NCBI GenBank assembly: GCA_965655095.1
Contig: OZ296650.1
Location: 114,266,001-114,330,000 of the forward strand
From: Haplodiscus bocki
Lineage: Eukaryota
Direction of reading: 5' to 3'
Length of the DNA stretch: 64,000 nt
The position numbers were made by a program, and so were the translations under genes. The notes beneath the pieces are model-generated. The model was given only the letters and a program-made list of their open reading frames with translations, did no database searches and was not told the DNA's origin. Position 1 is the first letter of the stretch, and the number at the start of each line of letters is the position of its first letter. This document shows, one piece after another, positions 5,531 to 62,974 of the stretch.

Positions 5531-6424
5531 TCATCTGGTAGCGGGCGCTCCCGTCTCCAGTTCAACCTTCACTTCGTTATTGAAGAGCTCAAAATTGCGT
5601 AATTTGAGCTTTTCTCTCGGTACACCTTCTTCTAGAAGTTCTCTTCGTTTTTTCAGACATAGACTCTCTTTAATAGCTTCATCTTTTGATAAGGCTTGTG
5701 AGATGAAAATATTTTGTGATTTTAGCTCATTTCGTCTTTCCACACTTTTGGCTAACACCAATCGTACCTCGTGAGATGTGGCGAGTGTTACGAGCAGGGT
5801 GCGGGGTTTGGTTCTATCCTTGTTGAATTTTCCTAACCGTTTCATTTCAAATACTTGGGGGTTGACGCCTAGGCACTTCAGCACTTCATTTATTTTCTCG
5901 TTTGTTGGGATGAGATTTTCGTTTCGTGATTTTTCCGGATCTTCGCTGATCCCTTGTATTCTAAAACTTCTTTCAGTGTTGTGCGTGTTTTTGATGACAC
6001 TAGCTTTTGTTTCTGTTCCAGGAGGAATAGCTGCTTTTGTTGCGTTTTTGGCTGCGATAGTGCCGTAGTTTTCTTCGACTTTTTGACAAGTTCGCGTGAC
6101 GGCTTCTTGTACCTTTCGGTCTACTAACTTAGCTAGGTTGTTTTCAATCTTGTTCAGTTTCTCGTTTATATCAAGCTTCTCAAGTTTTTCTTCAATCTTC
6201 AAATCACATCTTTTGCGGATGAAATTGTCTCTCTCGTTGTTTTCGACACAAGTATTGCAAAGAAGCATTGCTAGTTGGCCGAGTTCTTTTATTCTGTTTA
6301 TGGCGACCGTGCTTAGACCAGTACATGTCGGGTCTAGATGCATTTGGCAACCGCAAGCGACGTATTTGTAAGATTTTTCATTAGCATTGATGGTTCGTTT
6401 ACAAGTCTTGCAGGGACGAGACAT
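5531..6424 (-). CDS. LINE ORF1 (PHD finger, coiled coil, ORF1 C-terminal nucleic-acid-binding region), 297 aa
   Basis: N-terminal CKTC...VAC...H...C...LLCNTC is PHD-like with one Cys replaced by Tyr. A heptad-rich segment follows, then FRIQGISE...KRLGKF...PRTLLVTL...IFISQALSK, typical of CR1/L2 ORF1. Confidence 0.85.
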   Translation of the reverse strand: MSRPCKTCKRTINANEKSYKYVACGCQMHLDPTCTGLSTVAINRIKELGQLAMLLCNTCVENNERDNFIRKRCDLKIEEKLEKLDINEKLNKIENNLAKLVDRKVQEAVTRTCQKVEENYGTIAAKNATKAAIPPGTETKASVIKNTHNTERSFRIQGISEDPEKSRNENLIPTNEKINEVLKCLGVNPQVFEMKRLGKFNKDRTKPRTLLVTLATSHEVRLVLAKSVERRNELKSQNIFISQALSKDEAIKESLCLKKRRELLEEGVPREKLKLRNFELFNNEVKVELETGAPATR

Positions 6425-6525
6425 TTCTGAAAACCACTCTAATCCTCGAAGCCCGTATTCAAACGGAGCCTGTCAGATCAAAGTGAATTCAAAAATGGTT
6501 TGCAGCGAAAAACTCACAAGCTAGA

Positions 6526-7113
6526 CTAGGCCGATTTTATTGCTTTATTTCGTGACTTCTTTGATGGTCTGGTATGTCGGTTTATCAGTTTTTGTAAATC
6601 GCAACCAAAGTTAAGAATAGTCTGCAGTAGATGAATCTCTAGGAAGGGTTTGATATGAAGCTTACGGTACTGGTTGGGAAGATCGCTCTTCTGTTTCTTC
6701 CTGGTCAATGTGTTTCTGATAACGTCCAGCGTTGGGATGCCGGTGGACTTCAATTCTCTGTATGCGTTTGGTGCAAGAACAAGTGGATTTTTGCTCACCT
6801 CGCGTTGGATATACACAATGCCGATAAGATTTGGAACTGAACTGACCTTCTCGACCAGTTGCTCGGGAGTAAGGGGGGTACGTTTGATTTGAGGATGACT
6901 GGTAATAGAGTTGTTGAGCACGTCGTGCCACTGAATGATACCTTCACCTCTGGGGACTAATCGAAGAATGTGACGAACCTGCTTTTCACGATCGGCTTGA
7001 GGGTTGAAGCTCAATCCAGGAGTTGCTTTGATTCGTCTGCCCAGTCTTCGTTTGATGTTTGGATAGCGATCAATTGAATGGCTCAGACTGCTGGCTCCAA
7101 TAAACACTACCAT
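6526..7113 (-). CDS. Additional upstream LINE ORF ('ORF0'): SGNH/GDSL-hydrolase-like protein, 195 aa from the first ATG
   Basis: Intact ORF. VVFIGASSL resembles block I (GDS), PGLSF block II, IIQWHDVLNNSI block III and RKLHI block V (DxxH without Asp). It is separated from ORF1 by a stop and a 101-bp spacer and lies in a different frame. Confidence 0.65.
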   Translation of the reverse strand: MVVFIGASSLSHSIDRYPNIKRRLGRRIKATPGLSFNPQADREKQVRHILRLVPRGEGIIQWHDVLNNSITSHPQIKRTPLTPEQLVEKVSSVPNLIGIVYIQREVSKNPLVLAPNAYRELKSTGIPTLDVIRNTLTRKKQKSDLPNQYRKLHIKPFLEIHLLQTILNFGCDLQKLINRHTRPSKKSRNKAIKSA

Positions 7114-7199
7114 TTGGGAGCAACCACGGCTACCCCAGAATTCATTCAATAAACTGAAACTATTTAATAATCCCGAGGGACCAAAATCTACAGCAATGC

Positions 7200-12019: not shown

Positions 12020-12150
12020 TGGTATTTAAGAGATTTTATTAACTTCAATAGTAATGAAAAAGGTCGAAATTGCATAGTGCTGAACTTGAAGTGGGTGAAA
12101 AATATGAACGGTTGAAATGGCATGGGTTGAAGGTTCATAGGTTGAAATTT
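12020..12150. mobile_element. Solo fragment resembling the MULE terminal inverted repeat at 53590-53736
   Basis: Shares iterated ggttgaa motifs and cggttgaaatggcat(g/a)gg with the TIR of the element at 52203-53736. Confidence 0.55.
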
Positions 12151-12524
12151 CTTTTAATGCCATGACGTGTAACCATCGAGACAGCGGGTAATTCCATTCA
12201 TTCAATTCTACTTACTTGATCTCTACTTTCATTCATCTCTTTCTACTTTTCGCTATCAAGCTAGAGCGATCAATCGATCACAAAGTACTCTTCGCTGTCA
12301 AGTAGTAATCGATAGCGTTTTTCTCCGAAATTTGTCATTTTTGTTCGCATCTCAGTTATTGCTTTTCCAGAATTGTCAGTCAATATTCGCAAAATTAGCC
12401 CAGTTCCAATATTTTGGGTATGATAATTCTTAAGCGCTTATTGCCTAGCATTCTTGATACCTATGTTAGTATTTTTCGTGACAATTTATGAAGCTTCTGT
12501 TGATACAAGATTCGTTTTCTACAG

Positions 12525-20650: not shown

Positions 20651-23600
20651 TGGAATGCTCAATGAGTTTTCATTTAGGCTTTTTATTTGGGTATAGGCTC
20701 TAAAAGGATACAACCGCCAGTAAACTACCTAGTTTACAATCAACAACTGTCGTCATTTGAAGACAGTTTTAAAGAACAATGAATTCTTCCAACAGCTCAA
20801 CTCCTTAACCTCAGTCATTCATTTCATTACACTCACTCTAGGGGCTGGAGTGTGCATAAATATGACTGCGTTTATACGCTTGTGTAAATTTTTCATTTGG
20901 GTTTTTATCCTCGCGTGTTCATTTGGCCAGCAAGTTGGCTATTATAATTTTCAGTGCCCTCAGGGCCAACTGAATTGACTGAAAAATACCAGACCGCTAT
21001 ATTTTCAACAGTCCGTAAACAACTTGCTCCAGCTCATTGCAGTACGGCTTTTCAAAAGAACAGCCACTGGAAAATATGATTCACCTCATCTCCGGAATGT
21101 TAGCAGTTTCACAAAAATTTCAGATCAACAAAAACATCCATTTTCTTAGTAGCAATCTGATACAGGTTATGTCAGATCTGCAACGAGCAACAACTTGCCA
21201 ATCCAACTCAAGCAACCCGAAACGACCTTTCGATGTTGGTTCCTCTCCAATTTCATTTCAATGGTTTTTTTTGAAACAAAACTCGTAAACATTGTTTATG
21301 CTATGGAATTGGGGATGGCGCCTCTTCTTCCCCCTACCTACAACGCCTGTTTTCATCCTACCTCATGCCTATGAAGATGTTTGATTTTCTTACCGATTCG
21401 AGACGGTCTGAAAAAAAGTTTTTCGAATGAGTGCTTCACAAAAATAGCTTGAAGTCAGTTTGCATGTAAAATTTAAAAAGCCTAATTAGCTTTGATAGAA
21501 ACGTCCTCAATATATGCTGTTTTACCAATTGTTGCCGACTAGACAAAATCAAAATCATACGCTCCTTTAAAAAAGTTGCAGCGTCAAAAGTTATGAAAGC
21601 GAAAGTTTTTCCAGCAGTGCGAACTATTAGTAAACCACAACCGAATAATACAGGAATTCTGTCATTTTTGTCGCGATCAAAGGCTTTTCTATGTCCATAG
21701 GACCTTGTATAAATTTTGCAGCGTGCAAAATGGCTAACGTGGAAAGATTTCGACTTACGCGAATCCTTCTGCCTCATTAAGAGCTCGTCTGATTGCATGT
21801 TGTCTTTTTCTTGGCCCAGCTAAAGCCAGTTTTGGGTGCAAAGGGACCTGTTAAAAGCACGTAGCGTGCGAATTGTCTGAATTGGAGTTCTTTGCGTCAC
21901 GCGAATCTTCTGACTAATTTAAAGCACAAATGGCTGCATTTTTTTGCCCAGCCAAAGCTAAGTTTGTGTACCTGGGGCACTGTAAAAATTATGTACCGTG
22001 CAGTGGCTGAACTGCAGGAAGCTGGCGTTATGCGAGTTTATGTCCTGCATGATTTAAATCATTCCCTATTGCATCTCATTTTTATTTTTGCCCCAACCGA
22101 AGCCAGTCTTATTCATATAGGGCCCTATAAAAAGTGGGAAGTGCGAATAGTTTCGATTAAAAAAATATTCGCGCTACGAGAACTCTACTCCATCCTCTTT
22201 CGTAAAGCACAAATAGTTGCGTTTTGTCGTTTTTTTGTCTGAACCACAGCCATTTTTGTGTGTTTAGGGCCTTGTAAATTGTGTATAGACAAATTGGCTG
22301 TGGTGGAATTTTCAGAACTGCAAGGGCAGCAGCAAGGGCTGCCTCAACTCTGCAGAGTAACTTTGAAAGAGTTCTAAAACTTGTATTTCCAGTTTCTCCA
22401 CTTCCGCAACGAACGAGACGCCCATCAAGTTCTCTTTGACCACTAAAAACGAGGCCTCCTGTCGCACCGACACAATATCTAGTGAATTCACCTAAAAGGG
22501 TCCGGAACAAAGGTTTTTTTTGTGGCGTGTTTGTCAGGTCAAAAACACAACTATCTTCGACAAGCAATTCCCGTCAGAAGATTCGAATTTGTTCAGTATT
22601 TTTGGACGCTACTGTGGCAGTGGAAACCCATCAGTGGTAAGCGTATGAGACAATGGAGTACTCTTTTAGAAGATCTTTCCAAGACCTTGTTGAAATAGAC
22701 TACGACGAAATTCGTTGCGATGTTCCTGTCTCATCAGACGGGGAATCCGTTGACGATTTTCACCCGTTCAACATTCATGCTGACTGGTACAACTCGAGTT
22801 CGATTTTAAACTATATAGTTACAAACCGTGGAGAAAAGCGAGGAGTTCGAGCCCTCAGAATATCTGTAGAAACTGCTCACTCCCCGTGCATTGTCTTGGG
22901 TGTTTTGAAATTTTCGTACAATTTCCGAGGATTGACGCCCGATGTAACTGGAAGTCACGTACTTCTTTAAAATCGGGACGTAGGAGATAATGTTGTGATA
23001 GAGAACGATGCTTTTATGATCACTCCTGATGAAAGTTTGGACTGAATTGAAAACGCTTGGCTGAGCAACAGTATTGTTGACGAAATGGTAGAATTTTTTA
23101 CTCTTTGTCGACTTTGGTGAGAGCTGCCTGCGTTTTAGCCTCAACTACACTGTTCCGCCAAAGAAAGTCTTTTTTAAACGCGTTGAGCCGCAGCAATTTC
23201 GATTCTGCAAAGACAACCGAAGTTTTCATCTTTGCATAGACCTTCAACTGCCCCAAGAAGTTGAGGGCACAATGTCCCCAGTTTTTGCCCAACATGTACT
23301 ATGAGCAAGCGGAAGATCTATTTGTATCTCAATGGCCCAACCAGTTCACCAAACATTCGGTGGACGATTTCTATTTCTCACATTGATGCGAAGATGGAGA
23401 AGAGAGGGAATCTAATCCATTCACAACGGCACGGAAGTCCCTTCAGATGCAGTCAAACTTACTAGAGAGCCTACAAAACTTTTGTAAATGTTAAGGCCAA
23501 GGCGGTCGGGCCTTCTCTGGAACTTTTTGTGTGTTCGTGTTTAGAAATGTTACAACATAATAGTTCGTGTTTTGCGTTTCAGCAATGAGGTGAACGAGCA

Positions 23601-26600
23601 TTCTTCGTTGGGAAAGAATGACTATTGGAGTTGAGATTCAGTTTATACATCCAAGGAGTGCATTGTAAAGAGTTGTGTTCAATAGGTTTTTTTCCAAGTG
23701 AGTGTGTCTGTTGAAAAAACATGAGCTTGAGTTGGTATGTTGTGTAATTCGAAAGAGTTCAAGAGAAGAGACGAAGAAGGTCAGATTTGCCTGGTTGCTA
23801 ACCTAATAAGCCCTCAACTTTGAATGGAAAATGCCCCCACAAGCTGACGAAAGGAGCCACAATAAATGGCCGGACAATTCGAATCCGCGAAACCATTGGT
23901 TTCGATTGCGGGTGAACTTCTACGAAGTTTTGCAACATACATTGGTCTCGGGTAGTTTAAAGCTCTCTTTGAGTGTGGCCCTTGTTACCGCGAAAGCCAT
24001 TATTTTTTCACAATCTAAGACTTGACCGGTTTCTCGACGCTGTTGGTTTCCGTGAAGACCACGACTGAACCTTCAGGTATCATTATATAGTTTGCCGTTT
24101 GAATTTAACCGAGCATTAGAAGTGGCCTTGATATTGGAGTCCATGGGAGCCTCGATTTCGCCGGGACATCGTCTTTCAACAAAAAAGCAGCCTACTTCTC
24201 AGTCTACAGCTTTCTACTTGTAGAAGATTTTTCTATTGAAAAATCGTTGATTCTGTTCCCTGCATTGGACTTCTGTTCGGCCGAAATTTCTAAAAATGCT
24301 TTCAGAATTGAAAATTCTCGTTTTTCAGACGCCTTCTTTGAAAATGACCGACTTGATTTCATCCATCAATGTAATATTTAACAGCTTTTTATTTTTTCAG
24401 GTGGATATTCGCATCGAAAATCATCGATTTTCTGACAAGCATCAGAATCTTGATAGACCGAAAAAGCTGAAGTGTATTTGTAAATGTCACCTCTTTTATC
24501 CGGTCTCAATTCTCAAAAGCCGGGTGCGTGTTAGCTATCATCAGGGCCTCCCTCGACAACTTTTTACTGTGTCAAAGCTGTCTCTGTGAAAAATTTTTGA
24601 TACACGTTCGAGGAATCATTTCTGGACCCTTCTGAGGAAAAATATCGCACAGGTACCGCGCCTCTCGTTCCATATATTCCAACGAAAAACTCGTTGTCTA
24701 CGATTTTGATCTAGGCGAAAACAACGAACCAAAATGGAACTCCTGGAATGCTCAATGAGTTTTCATTTAGGCTTTTTAGTTGGGTATAGGCTCTAAAAGG
24801 ATACAACCGCCAGTAAACTACCTAGTTTACAATCACCAATTGTCGTCGTTTGAAGACAGTTTTAAAGAACAATGAATTCTTCCAACAGTTCAACTCCTTA
24901 ACCTCAGTCATTCATTTCATTACACTCACTCTAGGGGCTGGAGTTTTTCAACAACGGCTGTGTGCATAAATATGACTGCGTTTATACGCTTGTGTAAATT
25001 TTTCATTTGGGTTTTTATCCTCGCGTGTTCATTTGGCCAGCAAGTTGGCTATTATAATTTTCAGTGCCCTCAGGGCCAACTGAATTGACTGAAAAATACC
25101 AGACCGCTATATTTTCAACAGTCCGTAAACAACTTGCTCCAGCTCATTGCAGTACGGCTTTTCAAAAGAACAGCCACTGGAAAATATGATTCACCTCATC
25201 TCCGGAATGTTAGCAGTTTCACAAAAATTTCAACTTCAGATCAACAAAAACATCCATTTTCTTAGTAGCAATCTGGTACAGGATATGTCAGATCTGCAAC
25301 AAGCAACAACTTGCCAATCCAACTCAAGCAACCCGAAACGACCTTTCGATGTTGGTTCCTCTCCAATTTCATTCCAATGGTTTTTTATAAAACAAAACTC
25401 GTAAACATTGTTAATGCTATGGAATTGGGGATGGCACCTCTTCTTCCCCCTACTTACAACGCCTGTATTCATCCTCGCTCATGCCTATGAAGATGTTTGA
25501 TTTTCTTACCGATTCGCGACAGTCTGAAAAAAAGTTTTTCGAATGAGTGCTTCACAAAAATAGCTTGCAGTCAGTTTGCATGTAAAATTTAAAAAGCCTA
25601 ATTAGCTTTGATAGAAACCTCAATATATGCTGTTTTACCAATTGTTGCTCACTAGACAAAATCAAAATCATACGCTCCTGTAAAAAAATGTGCAGCGTCA
25701 AAAGTTACGAAAGCGAAAGTTTTTCCAGCAGTGCGAACCATTAGTAAACCACAACCGAATAATACAGGAATTCTGTCTTTGTCGCGATCAAAGGCTTTTC
25801 TATGTCCATAGGACCTTGTATAAATTTTGCAGCACGCAAAATGGCTAACGTGGAAAGAGTTCGTGTTACGCGAATCTTTCTCCTGCCTCATTAAGAGCTC
25901 GTCTGATTGCATGTTGTCTTTTTCTTGGCCCAGCTAAAGCCAGTTTTGGGTGCAAAGGGACCTGTTAAAAGTACGTAGCGTGCGAATTGTCTGAATTGGA
26001 GTATTTTGCGTCACGCGAATCTTCTGACTAATTTAAAGCAGAAATGGCTGCATTTTTTTGCCCAGCCAAAGCTAAGTGTGTGTACCTGGGGCACTGTGAA
26101 AATTATGTACCGTGCAGTGGCTGGACTGCAAGAAGCTCGCGTTATGCGATTCTACGTCCTGCATGATTTAAATCATTTCCTATTGCATCTCATCTGTATT
26201 TTTGCCCCAACCGAAGCCAGTCTTATCCATATAGGGCCCTATAAAAAGTGTGAAGTGCGAATAGTTTCGATTAAAAAAATATTCGCGCTACGAGAACTCT
26301 ACTCCATCCTCTTTCGTAAAGCACAAATAGTTGCGTTTTGTCGTTTTTTGTGTGAACCACAGCCATTCTTGTGTGTTTAGGGCCTTGTAAATTGTGTATA
26401 GCCAAATTGGCTGTGGTGGAATTTTCAGAACTTCAAGGGTTGCCTCAACTCTGCAGAGTGACTTTGAAAGAGTTCTAAAACTTGTATTTCCAGTTTCTCC
26501 TTTTCCGCAACGAACGAGACGTCCATCAAGTTCTCTTTGACCACTAAAAACGAGGCCTCCTGTCGCACCGACACAATATCTAGTGAATTCACCTAAAAGG

Positions 26601-29600
26601 GTCCTGAACAAAGGTTTTTTTTGGGGCGTGTTTGTCAGGTCAAAAACACAACTATCTTCGACAAGCAATTCCCGTCAGAAGATTCGAATTTGTTCAGTAT
26701 TTTTGGACGCTACTGTGGCAGTGGAAACCCATCAGTGGTAAGCGTATGAGACAATGGAGTACTCTTTTAGAAGATCTTTCCAAGACCTTGTTGAAATAGA
26801 CTACGACGAAATTCGTTGCGATGTTCCTGTCTCATCAGACGGGGAATCCGTTGACGATTTTCACCCGTTCAACATTCATGCTGACTGGTACAACTCGAGT
26901 TCGATTTTAAACTATATAGTTACAAACCGTGGAGAAAAGCGAGGAGTTCGAGCCCTCAGAATATCTGTAGAAACTGCTCACTCCCCGTGCATTGTCTTGG
27001 GTGTTTTGAAATTTTCGTACAATTTCCGAGGATTGACGCCCGATGTAACTGGAAGTCACGTACTTCTTTAAAATCGGGACGTAGGAGATAATGTTGTGAT
27101 AGAGAACGATGCTTTTATGATCACTCCTGATGAAAGTTTGGACTGAATTGAAAACGCTTGGCTGAGCAACAGTATTGTTGACGAAATGGTAGAATTTTTT
27201 ACTCTTTGTCGACTTTGGTGAGAGCTGCCTGCGTTTTAGCCTCAACTACACTGTTCCGCCAAAGAAAGTCTTTTTTAAACGCGTTGAGCCGCAGCAATTT
27301 CGATTCTGCAAAGACAACCGAAGTTTTCATCTTTGCATAGACCTTCAACTGCCCCAAGAAGTTGAGGGCACAATGTCCCCAGTTTTTGCCCAACATGTAC
27401 TATGAGCAAGCGGAAGATCTATTTGTATCTCAATGGCCCAACCAGTTCACCAAACATTCGGTGGACGATTTCTATTTCTCACATTGATGCGAAGATGGAG
27501 AAGAGAGGGAATCTAATCCATTCACAACGGCACGGAAGTCCCTTCAGATGCAGTCAAACTTACTAGAGAGCCTACAAAACTTTTGTAAATGTTAAGGCCA
27601 AGGCGGTCGGGCCTTCTCTGGAACTTTTTGTGTGTTCGTGTTTAGAAATGTTACAACATAATAGTTCGTGTTTTGCGTTTCAGCAATGAGGTGAACGAGC
27701 ATTCTTCGTTGGGAAAGAATGACTATTGGAGTTGAGATTCAGTTTATACATCCAAGGAGTGCATTGTAAAGAGTTGTGTTCAATAGGTTTTTTTCCAAGT
27801 GAGTGTGTCTGTTGAAAAAACATGAGCTTGAGTTGGTATGTTGTGTAATTCGAAAGAGTTCAAGAGAAGAGACGAAGAAGGTCAGATTTGCCTGGTTGCT
27901 AACCTAATAAGCCCTCAACTTTGAATGGAAAATGCCCCCACAAGCTGACGAAAGGAGCCACAATAAATGGCCGGACAATTCGAATCCGCGAAACCATTGG
28001 TTTCGATTGCGGGTGAACTTCTACGAAGTTTTGCAACATACATTGGTCTCGGGTAGTTTAAAGCTCTCTTTGAGTGTGGCCCTTGTTACCGCGAAAGCCA
28101 TTATTTTTTCACAATCTAAGACTTGACCGGTTTCTCGACGCTGTTGGTTTCCGTGAAGACCACGACTGAACCTTCAGGTATCATTATATAGTTTGCCGTT
28201 TGAATTTAACCGAGCATTAGAAGTGGCCTTGATATTGGAGTCCATGGGAGCCTCGATTTCGCCGGGACATCGTCTTTCAACAAAAAAGCAGCCTACTTCT
28301 CAGTCTACAGCTTTCTACTTGTAGAAGATTTTTCTATTGAAAAATCGTTGATTCTGTTCCCTGCATTGGACTTCTGTTCGGCCGAAATTTCTAAAAATGC
28401 TTTCAGAATTGAAAATTCTCGTTTTTCAGACGCCTTCTTTGAAAATGACCGACTTGATTTCATCCATCAATGTAATATTTAACAGCTTTTTATTTTTTCA
28501 GGTGGATATTCGCATCGAAAATCATCGATTTTCTGACAAGCATCAGAATCTTGATAGACCGAAAAAGCTGAAGTGTATTTGTAAATGTCACCTCTTTTAT
28601 CCGGTCTCAATTCTCAAAAGCCGGGTGCGTGTTAGCTATCATCAGGGCCTCCCTCGACAACTTTTTACTGTGTCAAAGCTGTCTCTGTGAAAAATTTTTG
28701 ATACACGTTCGAGGAATCATTTCTGGACCCTTCTGAGGAAAAATATCGCACAGGTACCGCGCCTCTCGTTCCATATATTCCAACGAAAAACTCGTTGTCT
28801 ACGATTTTGATCTAGGCGAAAACAACGAACCAAAATGGAACTCCTGGAATGCTCAATGAGTTTTCATTTAGGCTTTTTAGTTGGGTATAGGCTCTAAAAG
28901 GATACAACCGCCAGTAAACTACCTAGTTTACAATCACCAATTGTCGTCGTTTGAAGACAGTTTTAAAGAACAATGAATTCTTCCAACAGTTCAACTCCTT
29001 AACCTCAGTCATTCATTTCATTACACTCACTCTAGGGGCTGGAGTTTTTCAACAACGGCTGTGTGCATAAATATGACTGCGTTTATACGCTTGTGTAAAT
29101 TTTTCATTTGGGTTTTTATCCTCGCGTGTTCATTTGGCCAGCAAGTTGGCTATTATAATTTTCAGTGCCCTCAGGGCCAACTGAATTGACTGAAAAATAC
29201 CAGACCGCTATATTTTCAACAGTCCGTAAACAACTTGCTCCAGCTCATTGCAGTACGGCTTTTCAAAAGAACAGCCACTGGAAAATATGATTCACCTCAT
29301 CTCCGGAATGTTAGCAGTTTCACAAAAATTTCAACTTCAGATCAACAAAAACATCCATTTTCTTAGTAGCAATCTGGTACAGGATATGTCAGATCTGCAA
29401 CAAGCAACAACTTGCCAATCCAACTCAAGCAACCCGAAACGACCTTTCGATGTTGGTTCCTCTCCAATTTCATTCCAATGGTTTTTTATAAAACAAAACT
29501 CGTAAACATTGTTAATGCTATGGAATTGGGGATGGCACCTCTTCTTCCCCCTACTTACAACGCCTGTATTCATCCTCGCTCATGCCTATGAAGATGTTTG

Positions 29601-32600
29601 ATTTTCTTACCGATTCGCGACAGTCTGAAAAAAAGTTTTTCGAATGAGTGCTTCACAAAAATAGCTTGCAGTCAGTTTGCATGTAAAATTTAAAAAGCCT
29701 AATTAGCTTTGATAGAAACCTCAATATATGCTGTTTTACCAATTGTTGCTCACTAGACAAAATCAAAATCATACGCTCCTGTAAAAAAATGTGCAGCGTC
29801 AAAAGTTACGAAAGCGAAAGTTTTTCCAGCAGTGCGAACCATTAGTAAACCACAACCGAATAATACAGGAATTCTGTCTTTGTCGCGATCAAAGGCTTTT
29901 CTATGTCCATAGGACCTTGTATAAATTTTGCAGCACGCAAAATGGCTAACGTGGAAAGAGTTCGTGTTACGCGAATCTTTCTCCTGCCTCATTAAGAGCT
30001 CGTCTGATTGCATGTTGTCTTTTTCTTGGCCCAGCTAAAGCCAGTTTTGGGTGCAAAGGGACCTGTTAAAAGTACGTAGCGTGCGAATTGTCTGAATTGG
30101 AGTATTTTGCGTCACGCGAATCTTCTGACTAATTTAAAGCAGAAATGGCTGCATTTTTTTGCCCAGCCAAAGCTAAGTGTGTGTACCTGGGGCACTGTGA
30201 AAATTATGTACCGTGCAGTGGCTGGACTGCAAGAAGCTCGCGTTATGCGATTCTACGTCCTGCATGATTTAAATCATTTCCTATTGCATCTCATCTGTAT
30301 TTTTGCCCCAACCGAAGCCAGTCTTATCCATATAGGGCCCTATAAAAAGTGTGAAGTGCGAATAGTTTCGATTAAAAAAATATTCGCGCTACGAGAACTC
30401 TACTCCATCCTCTTTCGTAAAGCACAAATAGTTGCGTTTTGTCGTTTTTTGTGTGAACCACAGCCATTCTTGTGTGTTTAGGGCCTTGTAAATTGTGTAT
30501 AGCCAAATTGGCTGTGGTGGAATTTTCAGAACTTCAAGGGTTGCCTCAACTCTGCAGAGTGACTTTGAAAGAGTTCTAAAACTTGTATTTCCAGTTTCTC
30601 CTTTTCCGCAACGAACGAGACGTCCATCAAGTTCTCTTTGACCACTAAAAACGAGGCCTCCTGTCGCACCGACACAATATCTAGTGAATTCACCTAAAAG
30701 GGTCCTGAACAAAGGTTTTTTTTGGGGCGTGTTTGTCAGGTCAAAAACACAACTATCTTCGACAAGCAATTCCCGTCAGAAGATTCGAATTTGTTCAGTA
30801 TTTTTGGACGCTACTGTGGCAGTGGAAACCCATCAGTGGTAAGCGTATGAGACAATGGAGTACTCTTTTAGAAGATCTTTCCAAGACGTTGTTGAAATAG
30901 ACTACGACGAAATTCTGTGCGATGTTCCTGTCTCATCAGACGGGGAATCCGTTGACGATTTTCACCCGTTCAACATTCATGCTGACTGGAACAACTCGAG
31001 TTCGATTTTAAACTATATAGTTACAAACCGTGGAGAAAAGCGAGGAGTTCGAGCCCTCAGAATATCTGTAGAAACTGCTCACTCCCCGTGCATTGTCTTG
31101 GGTGTTATGAAATTTTCGTACAATTTCCGAGGATTGACGCCCGATGTAACTGGAAGTCACGTACTTCTTTAAAATCGGGACGTAGGAGATAATGTTGTGA
31201 TAGAGAACGATGCTTTTATGATCACTCCTGATGAAAGTTTGGACTGAATTGAAAACGCTTGGCTGAGCAACAGTATTGTTGACGAAATGTTAGAATTTTT
31301 TACTGTTTGTCGATTTTGGTGAGAGCTGCCTGCGTTTTGGCCTCAACGACACTGTTCCGCCAAAGAAAGTCTTTTCTAAACGCGGCGAGCCGCAGCAGTT
31401 TCGATTCTGCAAAGACAATCGAAGTTTCCGTCTTTACAGAGACCTTCAACTGCCCCAAGCAATTGAGGGCACTATGTCCCCAGTTTTTGCCCAACATGTA
31501 CTATGAGCAAGCGGAAGATCTATTTGTATCTCAATGGCCCAACCAGTTCACCAAACATTCGGTGGACGATTTCTATTTCTCACATTGAGGCGAAGATGGA
31601 GAAGAGAGGGAATCTAATCCATTGATAACGGCACGGAAGGTCCCTTCAGATGCAGTCAAACTTACTAGAGAGCCTACAAAACCCTTGTAAATGTAAAGGC
31701 CAAGGCGGTCGGGCCTTTTCTGGACCTTTTCGTGTGTTTGTGTTTAGAAATGTTGCAACATAATAGTTTGTGCTTTGCATTTCAGCAATGAGGTGAACGA
31801 GCATTCTTCTTTGGGAAAGAATGACTATTGGAGTTGAGATTCAGTTTATACATCCAAGGAGTGCATTTTAAAGTGTTGTGTTCAATAGGTTTTTTTCCAA
31901 GTGAGTGTGTCTGTTGAAAAAACATGAGCTTGAGTTGGTATGTTGTGTAATTCGAAAGAGTTCAAGAGAAGAGACGAAGGTCAGATTTGCCTGGTTGCTA
32001 ACCTAATAAGCCCTCAACTTTGAATGGAAAATGCCCCCACAAGCTGACGAAAGGAGCCACAATAAATGGCCGGACAATTCGAATCCGCGAAACCATTGGT
32101 TTCGATTGCGGGTGAACTTCTACGAAGTTTTGCAACATACATTGGTCTCGGGTAGTTTAAAGCTCTCTTTGAGTGTGGCCCTTGTTACCGCGAAAGCCAT
32201 TATTTTTTCACAATCTAAGACTTGACCGGTTTCTCGACGCTGTTGGTTTCCGTGAAGACCACGACTGAACCTTCAGGTATCATTATATAGTTTGCCGTTT
32301 GAATTTAACCGAGCATTAGAAGTGGCCTTGATATTGGAGTCCATGGGAGCCTCGATTTCGCCGGGACATCGTCTTTCAACAAAAAAGCAGCCTACTTCTC
32401 AGTCTACAGCTTTCTACTTGTAGAAGATTTTTCTATTGAAAAATCGTTGATTCTGTTCCCTGCATTGGACTTCTGTTCGGCCGAAATTTCTAAAAATGCT
32501 TTCAGAATTGAAAATTCTCGTTTTTCAGACGCCTTCTTTGAAAATGACCGACTTGATTTCATCCATCAATGTAATATTTAACAGCTTTTTATTTTTTCAG

Positions 32601-46602: not shown

Positions 46603-47467
46603 CTAAACAATCATGGATTTCTATTATAAACTCACTAATAAAAAATTATCCAATTCCCAATCAATTGATACATTCCGAATTTTGATTGATTTTAATTCTA
46701 CAGCCCTTCTATTATTCTTTGTAATCTAGTTAGTATTTGGCATTTTTTTTCGAAAAAAAATATCCTTTTTGCCATAAATCATAAACTAACATGACTTGAT
46801 AGCAAATTTTGAAGTTTTTGAAGACTTGAAGTCAAAAAGGATCCTATTTTTTTTTTGTTTTGGTAAATATTTCAGATATATGATGGTTGTAAATGAACTT
46901 TTTTGACCAGAGTGATTCAATGTTTATCAGATATGTATCATTAAAAACATCGGATTCATTTGTGTTTGTAATAAATACCAAGATAAAACCCTGTTGCCAA
47001 ATCAAGTTGTCATTATTGAAATTCGTTTTACTATGTTAACAGAGCTCTTTCCATAGCGGCATCGTGATGTGTGGTTACAAGTGTTTCATTTAGCCTTACT
47101 AGCGCTAAGTTCTACATGTACCTTTAATCAGGCTTTTAGCACTGTTATTAGGCGAATTAAAGGCCCAAACTTATTTTAGCGATTCACTTCAGCGGTTTTC
47201 AAGTCCTCTTTCCCACATGAAAACTGTGTAGATTTTGCAGACAGAAAATCTTCTACGGACAACAGAAGGCCATATTATGACATCTTTCCAAAAATTTGGC
47301 GTCTGATTACCTTTTGATGTCTCGATAATGTTTGTCAGAAGCATATTCGCGAAATTTCATCCATTTCAACTTTGAGGAAAAATGATGAATTTTTTTTTGA
47401 ATTTTGATTTAAATTTTCAAAACTTGATCTTGATTTGAATACGATTTGAATGGCAGTAGCGCTTTAC

Positions 47468-47718
47468 CTGCGCAACAAGCGCTGCCAGGGGAGCAACAAG
47501 ACCCATAACCATCTGCATCGGTACAGCAAGTGGCTTCTTTCTTACAGCACTGGTAATCTGCGTCGTATTTGTTCTTTTTTGCGAGCACACACTTGAAGTA
47601 GCCCTCTTGACAGGCCTGCTTTCCCCCCATAAAATGAGGCAAAAACGTGAATGCCATCGCCAGCAGAAATAGAAACAAAATAAAGAGAGCCTCTTTGATT
47701 CTGTAGTGGTACAACAAT
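47468..47718 (-). CDS. Cys-rich membrane protein, transmembrane plus Cys-rich exon
   Basis: Acceptor tccctcag| (alternative same-phase acceptor gives start 47700), donor gcag|gtaaag. Translates RLLYHYRIKEALFILFLFLLAMAFTFLPHFMGGKQACQEGYFKC...QCCKKEATCCTDADGYGSCCSPGSACCA. Confidence 0.85.
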
Positions 47719-48054
47719 CTGAGGGAGGACAATTTCAGGGATGCTCAAATCATTTTGTGAAAGCTGAAACTTCTGCAATTTCTGTGTCATTTCTTTTTGA
47801 AATACTGATAAAAATAAACACATCAGAGCACAAATCTTCTAGTCGAATATCACCATCTTTCCAAAAATTTAGGAATATTAGGAATTTCCAAAAATGTCTA
47901 GTAAAAGTTTCTTCGAATTTTATCTAGTTTACAATATTTTTTATTTGAAAGTACTACGGCCAATATTGAAAAAGTCACGAATTGTCATTTTGAGACAATT
48001 TTGGCTCAAATGGGTGGTTTTTTCAATTTTCAAATTAAAAAGATTAAAAAAATT

Positions 48055-51379: not shown

Positions 51380-52202
51380 CTAAAATGAAGAAAATAAAAT
51401 TCTTAATCAAACACTCATGTTATCATCAAATCATGACACCATAAAGATGTATCATTTTCAGCCCATATTTAAATATGGATGGAAAATCAGTCACTCGCCG
51501 CTTGCGTTTTCTGCTTGCTATTTTTTGGCTACTTTTCGTCAATATTTTTGTCCTCTATTCTGGAAACTATGCCCAAAAAAGACCAATGCTGTAATGAGGG
51601 ATCCCAAGGAGACACTAATAGGTCTTCAACTAAGTTTTCGTTGCATTCAAAAAATATTTTGATGTTTTTTAGCGAAAAAAAAATCAAAAATTGAGCCTAT
51701 TCGAAGATTTTGAAACTATGCTAAAAGCTAAGTTTGAAAGTGACCCAGATGTTGCGGATGCTTAAAGAAGAAACAGTTTTTCACATACTACATTTTGTTG
51801 CACTCAAGAAATTTTTAAATGGTTTGTTTCATCGCAAAAAAAAACTAAATTCGGTGTATTTTTGCTTTTCAAAAAGTTGTTTCATCAAAATTTTTGTTGT
51901 GCATCCTGGAAGATGAGTCTGAAAATGGCCTTTATTTGGCAGAGGCACGAGAAAGAGACTCCAATGTATTACATACTACTTTAGCATTGTGGTCAGAAAA
52001 ATTTTCGATTGTTTTTCTGCGTCAAAAAACTTGGAAAATTTGTTTACTGTCTTAATTTTAAGTCCTTAGATTTATACCTAATCGCTCCAAGTCCACTGAG
52101 GTTTCAAGTAAAAAATAATGGCACAGTTTTCTTGCTTTTTCGAGAAGCTGTCATGACCCTGGCACAAATGTCCTTAGTGCTCTGTTTTTACTTGTGTTCA
52201 CC

Positions 52203-53736
52203 GTTTAAATGCCATTTCGTCCTACGCCATTTCAACCGCTTCAAATTCAACCGTTCACACTTTCAACCGCTTGCAAATTCAACCGCCGCAATTTCAACCT
52301 ATTTATTTGAGTCCAAGGTTATTCAATTTTTTCAGGACGTTCGAAAACAATTAAAGTAATTAAAGAATCAATAGGACGTCATCTATAGGATAGTCTTATT
52401 TGAACATTTTTCGAAAGGGTTAGCCAGCCCGTAGTCCAAATGTACTTCAATCTCATTGTATCTTGGATTAAACTGTACAGCCAGTCTTGTTAATGTTCTG
52501 AGACCCACTCCGGTAGGCTGCAAGGAGGCGTTACGACAAAAAATCAAAGATTCAATCAACTTGATATTTCTTTTTCTGCAAAAAAAAACAAAAAACTGAG
52601 TTTTATTCAGAAGACCGATAAGAATAAAGCAAAGTAAAGGAAAAAAACTTACCAAAAATCTGTATCTTTATCAAATTTACACAATCCATGTAGAGTTGTC
52701 CGGTTTTGCTCCACCTTCTGTATATGTACTGCTACCGAACAAAACAGAAAACACCTATAATAGAATGATTGAATTGCTGAGTGAAGAAACGAACCCCAAC
52801 CCTGGCAAAACACTGGCAGACTTCGAAAAGGCGGCGTTGAATACTTCCAGCAAAAAGTTCCCTCTTTCAGAAATATCGTGCTGTTATCTCCACAGAAGCT
52901 ATCTTTTAACCGCAAAGTCAATGAGATCGGATTGAAAACTTATTACGAAAATTAAATTCGGGGAACCAGTGTTGGGGTTCGTTTCTTCACTCAGCATTTC
53001 AACATTCTATCAAAAGTTTTTTCTGTTTTGTTCGGTAGCAGTACATATACAGAAGGTGGAGCAAAACTGTGCAACTCTACATGGATTGTGTAAATTTGAT
53101 AAAGATAGATTTTTCGTAACTTTGTTTCTTTTATTTTGCTTTAATTATTCTTTTGTCTTCTGAATAAAACTCTAGTTTTTTTTGATTTTTTGCAGAAAAA
53201 AAATTAAGATGAGGGGATCTTTGATATTTGTCGTGACGCCTCCTTGCAGCCTCCCGGAGTGCGTCTTAGAACATTAACATGACTGGCTGTACAGTTTAAT
53301 CCAAGAGACACTGTCTCTTGGGAGATCGGAAGTGCATTTGGACTACGGGCTGGCTAACCCGTTAGAAAAATGTTCAAAGCCGGTGACAAGAAATCAAAAT
53401 CCCCCAAGTTTTTTGTACTAGTGAGATGCAAATTGCATATGATTTCTTTCTGGTGAAGTTCGAAAACATCGTTTGCAAGCTTGGTACATATGGTAGTTTG
53501 TCCAATATGACCTTTGGAATTCATGTAAGACTGTTTTATTGATGACGTCCAATTGATTCTTTAATTACTTTAATTGTTTTCAAACGTCTTGAAAAAATTG
53601 AATAACCTTGAACTTAATTAAATAGGTCGAATTTGGTGCGGTTGAATTTGCAGGTGGTCGAAAGACAGGCGGTTGAAAGTGTAAACGGTTAGAAATGAAG
53701 CGGTTGAAATGGCATAGGACGGAATGTCCTGACACC
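52203..53736. mobile_element. Palindromic non-autonomous Mutator-like element (MULE) with an inverted-duplicated transposase fragment and 9-bp TSD
   Basis: Arms 52203-52805 and 52966-53736 are inverted. Flanks are gtgttcacc (52194-52202) and gtgtttacc (53737-53745). The + strand at ~52670-52893 reads YQIYTIHVELSGFAPPSVYVLLPNKTENTYNRM...LADFEKAALN...FPLSEISCCYLH (MULE transposase core). Confidence 0.9.
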
Positions 53737-54678
53737 GTGTTTACCAATGGTACGATTCTACAAAGCTCTACAAAAATAGTGCAATGCTTGACTTCGAATT
53801 GTTTTTACTGGCAATTTTCAGCAACTTTGCTGTAAATGCTGAGAGAATGCGATTTTTTAAATATGAAAGCTGAAGACATATATCATATGGTCTATGCTGA
53901 CTTTTTTTTTGCGAGACCACCAAATCTATGTCAAAGGGACTTCTCCCTAATTTGACGATTACAAACGCAGTGGCTATATCTTGGGTTGTAAAGCTGTGTC
54001 CCTATCTATAGAAATGACTTTCAACTTCGAAAGTGTCGAACTGTCCAACTTTTTTTATATTTGCTAGTCAAAAGTTAATCATCAAGCGCTAGTTTTGCTC
54101 GTTTCCACCAACTTTTTGCTACGTTCTTTTCTTCGTAGAATTGGACAAAATTATTCGAAAATTTTTGGCTCAAATTTTGCTATTTTTGACACTTTTCGCT
54201 CATTAACCTTGCAAGTCATCTGTATATCTACGCAACATGCATTAATTAAAACAATACCTTGAATTTGGAGAAATTTTCCACTTATTTTAACGTTTCGTCG
54301 AAAGGAGCGTTTTCAGTGAGCCAAAAATAGCTAATTTTGTAATTTGCCCTGAATTTCTGCACATATGCTATTCATATACTGTAGTAGCCTAGTGTTTGCT
54401 TAATCGAAACTTTCGAAATTTTCGAAATTTTTATCAAAACTGATCCTTGACACTTCTGCTGACAAAAATCGGTTACTGTTATTTTCACGAGTCAACTTTT
54501 TTGTGACGTTGTAACTAACGTTAATTGTCAGCCGCATAAAAAAGTTCGGAAAGCCGGACAAAAAGTTTTCAGCGCCGAAGTTTTCATCTAATTAAATTTT
54601 GAATATGGATTCATTGTATCGGTTCAATGCAGTCTAACAGTTTCGAATTCAAGAGTTCCGTTGGCTGCATGGTCTTAC

Positions 54679-54863
54679 TTCTTCGATTTGTTGTCTTGTT
54701 TTTTGAACGAATATTTGCTACTGATGCTGGTGGGTTTCACGGGCTCACTCGACCGTCTGTTCATCTTTGAGGTGGGAGATTGATGCGAACTCGTGCTGGG
54801 AATGATCAAGTCTACAAAGCCGCTGTGTGTAGACGACTCACTTGTGTCTCCCTCTCCTTCCAT
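54679..54863 (-). CDS. Cys-rich membrane protein, first coding exon
   Basis: gcaATGg start, Ser-rich MEGEGDTSESSTHSG...KQDNKSK, donor aa|gtaaga (phase 2) matching the exon at 51379. Confidence 0.75.
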
Positions 54864-62335: not shown

Positions 62336-62431
62336 AACGGGTCCGTATGCGCAGTAATACCGATAGTTTAATTTAAATACAACGCACGCAATCAAATATG
62401 AATTTTGTCGAAGATTTTTGTGTTTCATTAG

Positions 62432-62541
62432 GTGCCGATATATCTGATTACTTCAATTATGGATTCACCGAAGAGACATGGGCTGCGTATTGTGACAGAC
62501 AAAGAAGACTGCGGGCGGAAGCCACAGCCAAAGGGATGGTG
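62432..62541 (+). CDS. FIP1L1: FIP1 exon with the Fip1 motif; the gene continues beyond this exon
   Basis: Acceptor tttcattag|, (G)[36 protein letters not shown], donor gtg|gtaagt. Splicing restores [18 protein letters not shown]. Confidence 0.97.
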
Positions 62542-62974
62542 GTAAGTAATTCAACCTCAAATGAAATGAGTTGTGAATTGAAAGAATAGGCGACTTTATT
62601 ATTTACATTTCCAATTTCACACGGATTGTTTTATCAAAAATGAAAGAAAATAATGAAAAACTTATGTGTTAGCAACAGGGCTGTAAAAATTACGAAAAAA
62701 TATCGAAGGGAAAATCAATTATTAATATCGAAGCCGAAGGTAAAAATATTGTTAGACGTGTCCGTTTTTTTCCAGACCTGCTCATGTGGAAATCATGTGA
62801 CTCTACACTGATTTGTTCTAGCACTCAGTTCTGGCCTTACATGTAAAGTTTAGTGGCCTTGTGTAGTTATTTCACAATTTCAAAACCGCAACTCGTTTTC
62901 AGTTTTCGCGGTTTAGGACTTAAATTCGCCTAAATTGACAGAACATAATTTCTGTCGACTTTAAACGATTTTAA

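What the first reader, a model, noticed from the sequence alone, without database searches (positions are those of the whole stretch)
52203..53736. Mu-killer-like hairpin locus: inverted duplication of a MULE end plus transposase sequence inside a host intron
Seen: about 600-bp inverted arms each containing the TIR and the same transposase-core segment, a 160-bp loop (52806-52965) that continues the transposase (DFEKAA...CYLH), and an 8/9-matching 9-bp TSD, so the palindrome inserted as a unit. It lies in intron 1 of the Cys-rich gene and possibly also in the antisense FIP1 intron. Established: maize Mu killer is an inverted duplication of a MuDR end with part of mudrA, and read-through of it gives hairpin RNA that silences MuDR in trans. 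Inference: host transcription from either strand would produce long transposase dsRNA, making this a candidate mobile trans-silencer or ADAR substrate in an animal. The arms are visibly diverged and the right arm has about 150 extra bp (53379-53526).
Basis: partly seen in the sequence, partly recalled or inferred. Interest (0 to 1): 0.8.

Follow-up and report, generated by a model that had tools for sequence, protein, structure and literature searches.

The report
Old palindromic wreck of a MULE transposon
A 1.5-kb jumping-gene remnant really is folded into a palindrome like maize Mu killer, but it is old, decayed and apparently one of a kind, its transposon family looks dead, and no RNA data exist to show it silences anything.

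Summary
Window 52203-53736 is a 1,534-bp palindromic element. Its arms are about 600 bp (603 and 771 bp) and 89.7% alike. It has a 160-bp centre carrying a MULE transposase fragment, and an 8/9-matching 9-bp target-site duplication.

It belongs to a very abundant 2.3-kb FLYWCH-MULE (Phantom/Tm1-like) family of the same genome. I fetched seven ordinary copies, and none is palindromic.

Each arm is about 460-620 bp of the family's non-coding 3' region plus only about 140 bp of transposase core. Both arms carry the same odd junction, base for base: an 11-nt microhomology plus a 3-5-nt filler. So the junction arose once and was then duplicated in inverted orientation at a fold-back point. Later deletions made the "loop" and the 147-bp arm difference; that difference is a loss in the left arm, not extra sequence in the right.

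The arms are as diverged from each other as from an independent copy of their subfamily. There is no sign of conversion or constraint. No sibling palindrome was found, and no family transposase longer than 218 codons. No RNA run exists for this organism, so hairpin RNA, small RNAs and editing are untested.

Verdict: a real, structurally Mu-killer-like but most likely inert relic. The host-intron placement is plausible. The FIP1-intron idea is unsupported.

The parts
52194..52202 (.). Left copy of the 9-bp target-site duplication (GTGTTCACC)
   Evidence: Matches 53737-53745 at 8/9. Six complete family copies have 9-bp TSDs, four perfect and two 8/9.
52203..52666 (-). Left arm, outer part. This is the family's non-coding 3' region ('A') with a 3'-type tip (52203-52228) and about 15-bp tandem subrepeats. 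It runs in the native direction for a minus-oriented element. It carries a 147-bp deletion at 52398/52399.
   Evidence: BLAST to the right ends of L001-L003 in reverse orientation. Tip typing: 3 mismatches to the 3'-type, 7 to the 5'-type. Subrepeats: family D3.
52651..52666 (.). Junction J: the inner end of A (ACCAAAAATCT, 52651-52661) plus a 5-nt filler GTATC (52662-52666), joined to the transposase core in the opposite orientation
   Evidence: Comparison with L001 and L002. Ordinary copies have ACCRGAAATCT just before the core and its near-complement just after the stop codon. None of the 7 copies has this junction.
52667..52953 (+). Transposase core fragment 'B', sense on the plus strand. 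It corresponds to residues about 202-297 of a 479-aa relative, holds the second catalytic D (DFEKA), and is frameshifted after CCYLH. Positions 52806-52953 lie in the unpaired 'loop'.
   Evidence: Pfam MULE E=8.4e-7. 90% identical to L001 6071-6358. tblastn with P0018.
52954..52965 (-). 12-nt orphan segment. It is the reverse complement of the 12 nt (TTCCCCGAATTT) that follow the core fragment in ordinary copies, and it marks the original fold-back point.
   Evidence: L002 and L003 read ...TTCCCCGAATTTAAC after GAAAA.
52966..53103 (-). Inverted partial copy of the core ('b''), antisense on the plus strand. It pairs with 52667-52805.
   Evidence: (pairs I2, I8).
53104..53117 (.). Junction J', the mirror image of J (3-nt filler GAT, then AGATTTTTCGT)
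   Evidence: the same junction to the base on the other strand.
53109..53736 (+). Right arm, outer part. This is the 3' region 'A' in inverted direction relative to the element's own orientation. It retains 53379-53526 and ends in a 5'-type tip (53711-53736).
   Evidence: One 643-column BLAST match (85%) to L001 6822-7463. Tip: 1 mismatch to the 5'-type, 6 to the 3'-type. 57 contigs per run break off into unrelated sequence right behind 53736 (table 7).
53737..53745 (.). Right copy of the target-site duplication (GTGTTTACC)
54675..54863 (-). Putative exon 1 of the Cys-rich host gene (ATG at 54863; GTAAGA donor, the ORF's last three bases and its stop codon)
   Evidence: Model not verified by RNA or homologues; no Pfam hit.
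47409..47719 (-). Putative exon 2 of the host gene (transmembrane helix plus Cys-rich start), with the acceptor after tcctccctcag
   Evidence: The frame continues from exon 1 in phase 2. Unverified.

Best explanation
This is an old, rearranged, non-autonomous copy of a 2.3-kb FLYWCH-MULE (Phantom/Tm1-like) cut-and-paste transposon that is very abundant in this genome.

Shown: the layout is A' - J - B - 12 nt - b' - J' - A between one 3'-type and one 5'-type tip. A is the family's non-coding 3' region. B is about 290 bp of the DDE core.

Inferred origin: a growing DNA strand, during repair or replication of an element, switched strands at an 11-nt inverted microhomology just after the stop codon and just before the core. 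That made junction J. The strand then folded back a few bases after the YYEN codons, copying J and A again in reverse. It finished by annealing in the shared TIR subrepeats. A later deletion of about 148 bp next to the centre made today's 160-bp loop, and a 147-bp deletion shortened the left arm.

Since then both arms have decayed like any dead copy. If the putative host gene's 7-kb intron is transcribed, the RNA would fold into an imperfect duplex of about 600 bp. Dicer or ADAR could act on that duplex, as on countless intronic inverted repeats. I judge a present-day silencing role unlikely.
For: - Family and canonical layout come from seven same-genome copies (L001-L007). L008, reached through a FIP1 exon, is 100% identical to the window over 11,603 bp, so that assembly is this genome.
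- FLYWCH (E=2e-11) and MULE domains are present. A 479-aa intact relative aligns from residue 9/16 to 476 across the ordinary copies.
- 9-bp TSDs and consistent 5'-type and 3'-type tips are seen in all copies.
- J and J' are identical to the base in both arms and absent from all 7 ordinary copies. The 12-nt orphan segment matches the canonical continuation.
- The arms are 89.4-89.7% alike, and each is 86-92% identical to other copies.
- In an ML tree the two arms and L003 form an unresolved clade (100/99) with end branches 0.11, 0.097 and 0.094.
- Arm mismatches are 24 transitions to 37 transversions, so there is no pairing-preserving bias.
- The longest stop-free sense stretch in the 7 copies is 120-218 aa.
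- In a library of 1.8 billion proteins, every hit at 70% identity or more is 210 aa or shorter.
- Depth over the element is 60- to 3000-fold that of the flanks.
Against: - No RNA data exist, so a role cannot be excluded.
- The duplex still has seven perfect runs of 21-49 bp. 314 of its 1,514 21-mers occur exactly in just seven other copies, so small RNAs from it could still hit family members.
- The order of the strand switches is inferred from the end product only.
- The sibling search was weak. It covered seven sampled copies, and a protein word search that depends on ORF calling.
- The 50%-identity clustering of the representative library could hide an intact family member.
Confidence: 0.72

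Rival explanations
1. Animal counterpart of Mu killer. Read-through from the host gene makes a long hairpin RNA. Its small RNAs silence, or once silenced, the FLYWCH-MULE family in trans.
For: The anatomy is the same as Mu killer: TIR plus part of the transposase gene in inverted duplication (PMC3440606). A similar Ac/Ds case was made by aberrant transposition (bioRxiv 10.1101/2020.01.07.897926). There is a plausible intronic position on the host gene's strand, a very stable fold, and perfect duplex runs up to 49 bp with many 21-mers shared with other copies.
Against: There is no RNA of any kind for this organism. The arms diverge as fast as unrelated copies, with no conversion or compensatory pattern. 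A second subfamily has much shorter end branches (0.017-0.078), so it kept amplifying after the arms began to diverge. No intact transposase is left to silence. Only about 140 bp per arm is coding.
Confidence: 0.1
2. The palindrome formed elsewhere and transposed here as a unit, so it is one member of a mobile foldback-type non-autonomous subfamily.
For: It has one 5'-type and one 3'-type tip and a 9-bp TSD, so the family transposase could have moved it.
Against: An in-place rearrangement explains the TSD and the tips equally well. None of 7 sampled copies, and none of 20 further family protein fragments, shows junction J. The J'-spanning ORF has no relative in the protein collection (a weak test).
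Confidence: 0.2
3. Two independent family insertions lie head to head or nested, and only look like one palindrome.
For: The arms are no more alike than random family copies.
Against: Both arms carry the same non-canonical junction with filler, to the base. One TSD flanks the whole element. The centre continues the core and holds the 12-nt orphan.
Confidence: 0.02
4. An assembly artefact (a chimeric fold-back read).
For: The genome has many reported palindromes (earlier notes). The ENA contig is the same assembly, so it gives no independent support.
Against: Artefactual fold-backs have identical arms. These differ by 10% plus indels. Short-read contigs from four runs join both unique flanks to the tips with 0-3 differences (table 8, records 1, 8, 9, 16).
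Confidence: 0.02

Closest known systems
Mu killer (Muk) of maize
   Same: An inverted duplication that includes a Mutator-superfamily TIR and part of the transposase gene, placed where a neighbouring gene's transcription could read through it (PMC3440606).
   Different: Muk's hairpin covers TIRA and the 5' part of mudrA, and it is proven to make siRNAs and to silence MuDR heritably. Here the arms are mostly 3' non-coding sequence plus 140 bp of the core. They are 10% diverged. The target family looks dead. Nothing is known about RNA. The host is an animal without the plant RdDM pathway.
Ac/Ds composite insertions made by alternative transposition
   Same: Inverted duplications of fractured transposon pieces, generated by aberrant transposition or re-replication and transcribed into dsRNA (bioRxiv 10.1101/2020.01.07.897926).
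   Different: Those need two nearby elements and leave composite insertions with flanking duplications. Here a single element with one TSD and microhomology junctions is enough.
Tm1 / Phantom subclass of Mutator (Foldback-like) elements
   Same: A FLYWCH plus MULE transposase of about 480-500 aa, 9-bp TSDs, and composite TIRs with asymmetric outer motifs followed by 13-15-bp tandem repeats (PMC3169594).
   Different: Foldback-type arms are tandem repeats. Here the long arms are unique 3' sequence plus coding sequence, duplicated secondarily.
Animal hairpin-RNA (hpRNA) and inverted-repeat endo-siRNA loci; intronic inverted repeats edited by ADAR
   Same: Long intramolecular duplexes from inverted duplications are substrates for Dicer and ADAR. 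For Dicer I rely on my own recollection of Okamura 2008 and Tam 2008, which I saw here only as entries in a reference list. The ADAR link is from the abstracts of PMC5625713 and PMC9989829.
   Different: No expression, small RNA or editing evidence exists here.

Membership tests
Mutator superfamily, Phantom/Tm1-like (FLYWCH-MULE) | MULE DDE transposase domain | tested here: met
   PF10551 E=8.4e-7 on 52696-52935. Ordinary copies carry DGTF, DFEKA and NSVEGWH.
Mutator superfamily, Phantom/Tm1-like (FLYWCH-MULE) | N-terminal FLYWCH zinc finger in the autonomous form | tested here: met
   L002 3517-3777 hits PF04500 at E=2.1e-11, and L004 and L005 hit it too. It is absent from the palindrome itself.
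Mutator superfamily, Phantom/Tm1-like (FLYWCH-MULE) | 9-bp target-site duplication | tested here: met
   8/9 here. Four perfect and two 8/9 in six complete copies.
Mutator superfamily, Phantom/Tm1-like (FLYWCH-MULE) | Composite TIRs: asymmetric tips followed by short tandem repeats | tested here: met
   5'-type and 3'-type tips differ at 5 of 26 positions in all copies. About 15-bp CATTTCAACCGC-type subrepeats follow.
Mu killer-type hairpin silencer | Inverted duplication of a TIR plus part of the transposase gene | tested here: met
Mu killer-type hairpin silencer | Transcribed into hairpin RNA by read-through from a neighbouring promoter | not testable with these tools
   No RNA run holds the stretch. 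There are only 4 runs, all from one study and all stored as contigs.
Mu killer-type hairpin silencer | Arm-derived small RNAs | not testable with these tools
   No small-RNA data.
Mu killer-type hairpin silencer | Trans-silencing of an active autonomous element | tested here: inconclusive
   No intact family transposase was seen: at most 218 aa stop-free in 7 copies, and at most 210 aa among library hits at 70% identity or more. A younger subfamily amplified after the arms split. Silencing itself cannot be assayed here.
Foldback-type / foldback MITE family | Arms built of tandem repeats that make up nearly the whole element | tested here: not met
   Tandem subrepeats cover only the outer 100 bp or so. 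The rest of each arm is unique 3' and coding sequence.
Foldback-type / foldback MITE family | Several copies of the same structure at different sites | tested here: inconclusive
   None was found among 7 loci and 20 further protein fragments, or with the J'-ORF search. The whole assembly could not be searched by DNA.

The most novel reading that the evidence does not exclude
The locus was, at its birth, an animal equivalent of Mu killer. A single fold-back rearrangement of a Phantom-type MULE inside a transcribed intron produced hairpin RNA that helped shut down its own subfamily. What we see now is the fossil of that event. It may still feed small RNAs against the many remaining copies.
Probability: 0.1. 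Interest if true: 0.65.

Novelty: new member of a known kind. Interest (0 to 1): 0.3.

Why it matters
How a genome first recognises a DNA transposon for silencing is documented mainly in maize (Mu killer, Ac composite insertions). An animal example would be valuable.

This locus shows that the required structure does arise in an animal Mutator-type family. Its junctions preserve a readable record of how it arose: a microhomology strand switch followed by a fold-back.

As it stands, though, it is one decayed copy with no expression data. It is a candidate to include when small-RNA data for this organism appear, not a demonstrated silencer.

Tried and rejected
- RNA evidence: the look-up of sequencing runs returned four runs of one study, none recorded as RNA. 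Read laying could therefore only lay contigs, which say nothing about transcription, small RNAs or editing.
- Sibling search: a protein word search with the ORF that crosses J' (52969-53163) found nothing. This is a weak negative, because that ORF itself is not in the collection.
- Orthologous or alternative haplotype copy: an exact look-up of the putative exon 1 ORF found nothing. The FIP1 exon look-up returned the same sequence, 100% identical, so there is no independent haplotype.
- MAFFT multiple alignment of the arms underestimated identity (79.9%) because of the TIR subrepeats and the 147-bp gap. I used pairwise values instead.
- The shared-derived test against a 5-copy consensus gave 9 shared, 24 left-only and 14 right-only changes. 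It cannot date the duplication, because the shared changes are subfamily markers also present in L003.
- The bacterial promoter/terminator scan is irrelevant for a eukaryote and was ignored.
- The two-insertions and assembly-artefact readings were rejected (see rivals).
- Pfam gave nothing for the putative host exons.

Full report
**1. What is in the sequence**

The stretch 52203-53736 (1,534 bp) is a palindrome.
- The repeat finder lists collinear inverted pairs that tile 52209-52805 against 52966-53726.
- A gapped alignment of the left arm (52203-52805) with the reverse complement of the right arm (52966-53736) has 532 matches and 61 mismatches, 89.7%. It also shows one 147-bp indel, one 15-bp indel in the terminal subrepeats, and a few small gaps.
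- The 160 bp between the arms (52806-52965) continue an ORF (52696-52935, plus strand) that reads ...PPSVYVLLPNKTE...ADFEKAAL...CCYLH. That ORF hits Pfam MULE (PF10551, E=8.4e-7).
- The 9 bp on either side (GTGTTCACC and GTGTTTACC) match at 8 of 9. The chance of that is about 1e-4.
- As RNA the element folds into one long hairpin. The minimum free energy is -813 kcal/mol for 1,481 nt of the minus strand. The inner 491 nt have z=-27 against shuffles.

**2. The family it belongs to**

A word search with the 79-aa ORF found 12 short MULE fragments, all from one ENA assembly. Looking up where seven of them are encoded gave loci L001-L007. A look-up of the window's own FIP1 exon returned a contig of the same assembly that is 100% identical to the window over 11,603 bp. 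All these copies therefore come from the window's own genome.

The ordinary copy is 2.3 kb and has this layout:
- A 5'-type tip (GGTGTCAGGAC...) followed by roughly 15-bp tandem subrepeats.
- A FLYWCH zinc finger (PF04500, E=2e-11).
- A DDE core with DGTF, DFEKA and NSVEGWH.
- A stop codon.
- About 480 bp of non-coding 3' sequence, called A here.
- A 3'-type tip (reverse complement GGTTACATGTC...).

Six complete copies have 9-bp duplications, four perfect and two 8/9. An intact 479-aa FLYWCH-MULE protein from another sample aligns from residue 9/16 to 476 across these copies, in several frames. They are therefore decayed autonomous elements.

This architecture matches the Phantom subclass of Mutator and the Tm1 'Mutator/Foldback' family. 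Those have asymmetric tip motifs, 13-15-bp tandem repeats, 9-bp TSDs and a transposase of about 500 aa (PMC3169594; survey in PMC6446971).

The family is very abundant. With contigs of four runs laid at 80% likeness, summed depth is about 45 on the flanks. It is 30,000-160,000 over the terminal regions and 3,000-7,000 over the core. These depth sums are not copy numbers. In each of three runs, 52 to 57 contigs break into unrelated sequence exactly behind 53736, which fixes that end (table 7).

**3. Anatomy of the palindrome against the ordinary copy**

| Window coordinates | Content |
|---|---|
| 52203-52666 | 3' region A with a 3'-type tip, inverted relative to the core next to it |
| 52651-52666 | Junction J |
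| 52667-52953 | Core fragment B, sense on the plus strand, residues about 202-297 |
| 52954-52965 | 12-nt orphan segment |
| 52966-53103 | Partial core copy b', antisense |
| 53104-53117 | Junction J', the mirror of J |
| 53109-53736 | A again, ending in a 5'-type tip |

- At J, the inner end of A (ACCAAAAATCT) is joined to the core through a GTATC filler. In the mirror junction J' the filler is 3 nt.
- In ordinary copies, a near-identical 11-mer (ACCRGAAATCT) sits just before the core, and its near-complement sits just after the stop codon. The join was therefore a strand switch at an inverted microhomology.
- None of the seven ordinary copies has J. Both arms have it to the base, so J arose once and was then duplicated in inverted orientation.
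- The 12-nt orphan is the reverse complement of the 12 nt that follow the core fragment in ordinary copies. It has no partner inside the element and marks the original fold-back point.
- Today's 160-bp 'loop' is thus core sequence whose partner in the other arm was lost, either by a deletion of about 148 bp or by a second template jump.
- The 147 bp said to be 'extra' in the right arm are present in ordinary copies, so the left arm lost them.
- Only about 140 bp of each arm is coding.
- The element keeps one 5'-type and one 3'-type tip. The original orientation was therefore minus in the window. A pure fold-back would give two like tips. The simplest reading is that synthesis ended by annealing in the subrepeats shared by both TIRs. 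This order of events is inferred from the product.

**4. Age and constraint**

- In the A region the arms are 89.4% alike. Each arm is 86-92% alike to other copies.
- In a maximum-likelihood tree of core plus A, the two arms and the independent copy L003 form a well-supported clade (100/99). The clade is unresolved, with end branches of 0.11, 0.097 and 0.094.
- A second subfamily (L001, L004-L007) has end branches of 0.017-0.078. It went on amplifying after the arms began to diverge.
- Arm mismatches are 24 transitions and 37 transversions, so there is no bias toward pairing-preserving changes and no sign of conversion.
- The duplex still has seven perfect runs of 21-49 bp. 314 of its 1,514 21-mers occur exactly in just seven other copies.

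**5. Is there anything left to silence, and are there siblings?**

- The longest stop-free sense stretch in the seven copies is 120-218 aa.
- An exhaustive HMMER search of 1.8 billion representatives found family-level hits (70% identity or more) only up to 210 aa. Full-length proteins of 450-480 aa start at 54% identity or lower, and the one I looked up (P0018) comes from another sample. Clustering at 50% identity could hide an intact member.
- No sibling of the palindrome was seen in the seven loci or in 20 further protein fragments. The search with the ORF crossing J' also found nothing, but that search depends on ORF calling and is weak.

**6. Host context**

- On the minus strand, an ORF with an ATG at 54863 ends in a GTAAGA donor.
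- An ORF with a transmembrane helix and many cysteines begins after a polypyrimidine-AG near 47719, in the matching phase. The element would then lie in an intron of about 7 kb, on the gene's strand.
- The model has no Pfam hit and no RNA support.
- FIP1 is on the plus strand, with coding exons from 60868 and the Fip1 motif at 62398-62589. The element lies upstream of it, so the FIP1-intron idea has no support.

**7. Function**

Mu killer is defined by structure plus read-through hairpin RNA, siRNAs and heritable silencing (PMC3440606). A similar Ac/Ds case was generated by aberrant transposition (bioRxiv 10.1101/2020.01.07.897926).

Only the structural criterion can be tested here, and it is met. 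No RNA run of this organism could be found. Earlier notes of this scan on other palindromes of the same genome reported the same lack.

Several things point the other way: the age of the arms, the lack of any constraint on pairing, the later amplification of a sister subfamily, and the apparent death of the family. I therefore rate the element as a relic. If the intron is transcribed, it would be an ordinary intronic dsRNA substrate for Dicer or ADAR (abstracts of PMC5625713 and PMC9989829). I put a past or present silencing role at about 10%.

**8. Verdict**

- Observation: confirmed.
- Interpretation: partly supported. The structure matches, the function is untested, and mobility and the FIP1 intron are unsupported.
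- Novelty: a new member of a known kind.
- Interest: 0.3.

The scan had already noted a dead FLYWCH-MULE macrosatellite and several intronic palindromes elsewhere in this genome. I did not check those notes.

Noticed in passing
window 12057-12176: A solitary, degenerate end of the same MULE family (CATTTCAACCG-type subrepeats ending in ...GACGTGTAACC), with no partner end nearby.
   Followed up: partly
window 51450-51496: A short segment with summed contig depth near 14,000, against about 45 on either side. Dozens of contigs break off at 51450/51454 and at 51496, so it is a piece of another very high-copy repeat.
   Followed up: no
window 21400-30800: Near-identical ORF sets recur with a period of about 4.1 kb (for example 21892, 26006 and 30107 on the plus strand). 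This is a tandem array of at least three long units.
   Followed up: no
window 2800-7150, minus strand: A non-LTR retrotransposon with long open frames (endonuclease-like 344 aa, reverse-transcriptase-like 287 aa) and a 297-aa upstream ORF.
   Followed up: no
L009 (ENA ERZ27286549, 2,283-bp contig): An intact 479-aa FLYWCH-MULE transposase gene from another sample, on a contig the size of one element, with 13-14-bp tandem subrepeats near one end. It is 54% identical to this family in the core. It may be a live relative.
   Followed up: partly
L001-L007: The family splits into at least two subfamilies. One has PPSVYVLL (the palindrome and L003). The other has a cysteine or another residue where the first has the serine (PPCVYVLL in L005 and L007). 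The second has much shorter branches.
   Followed up: partly
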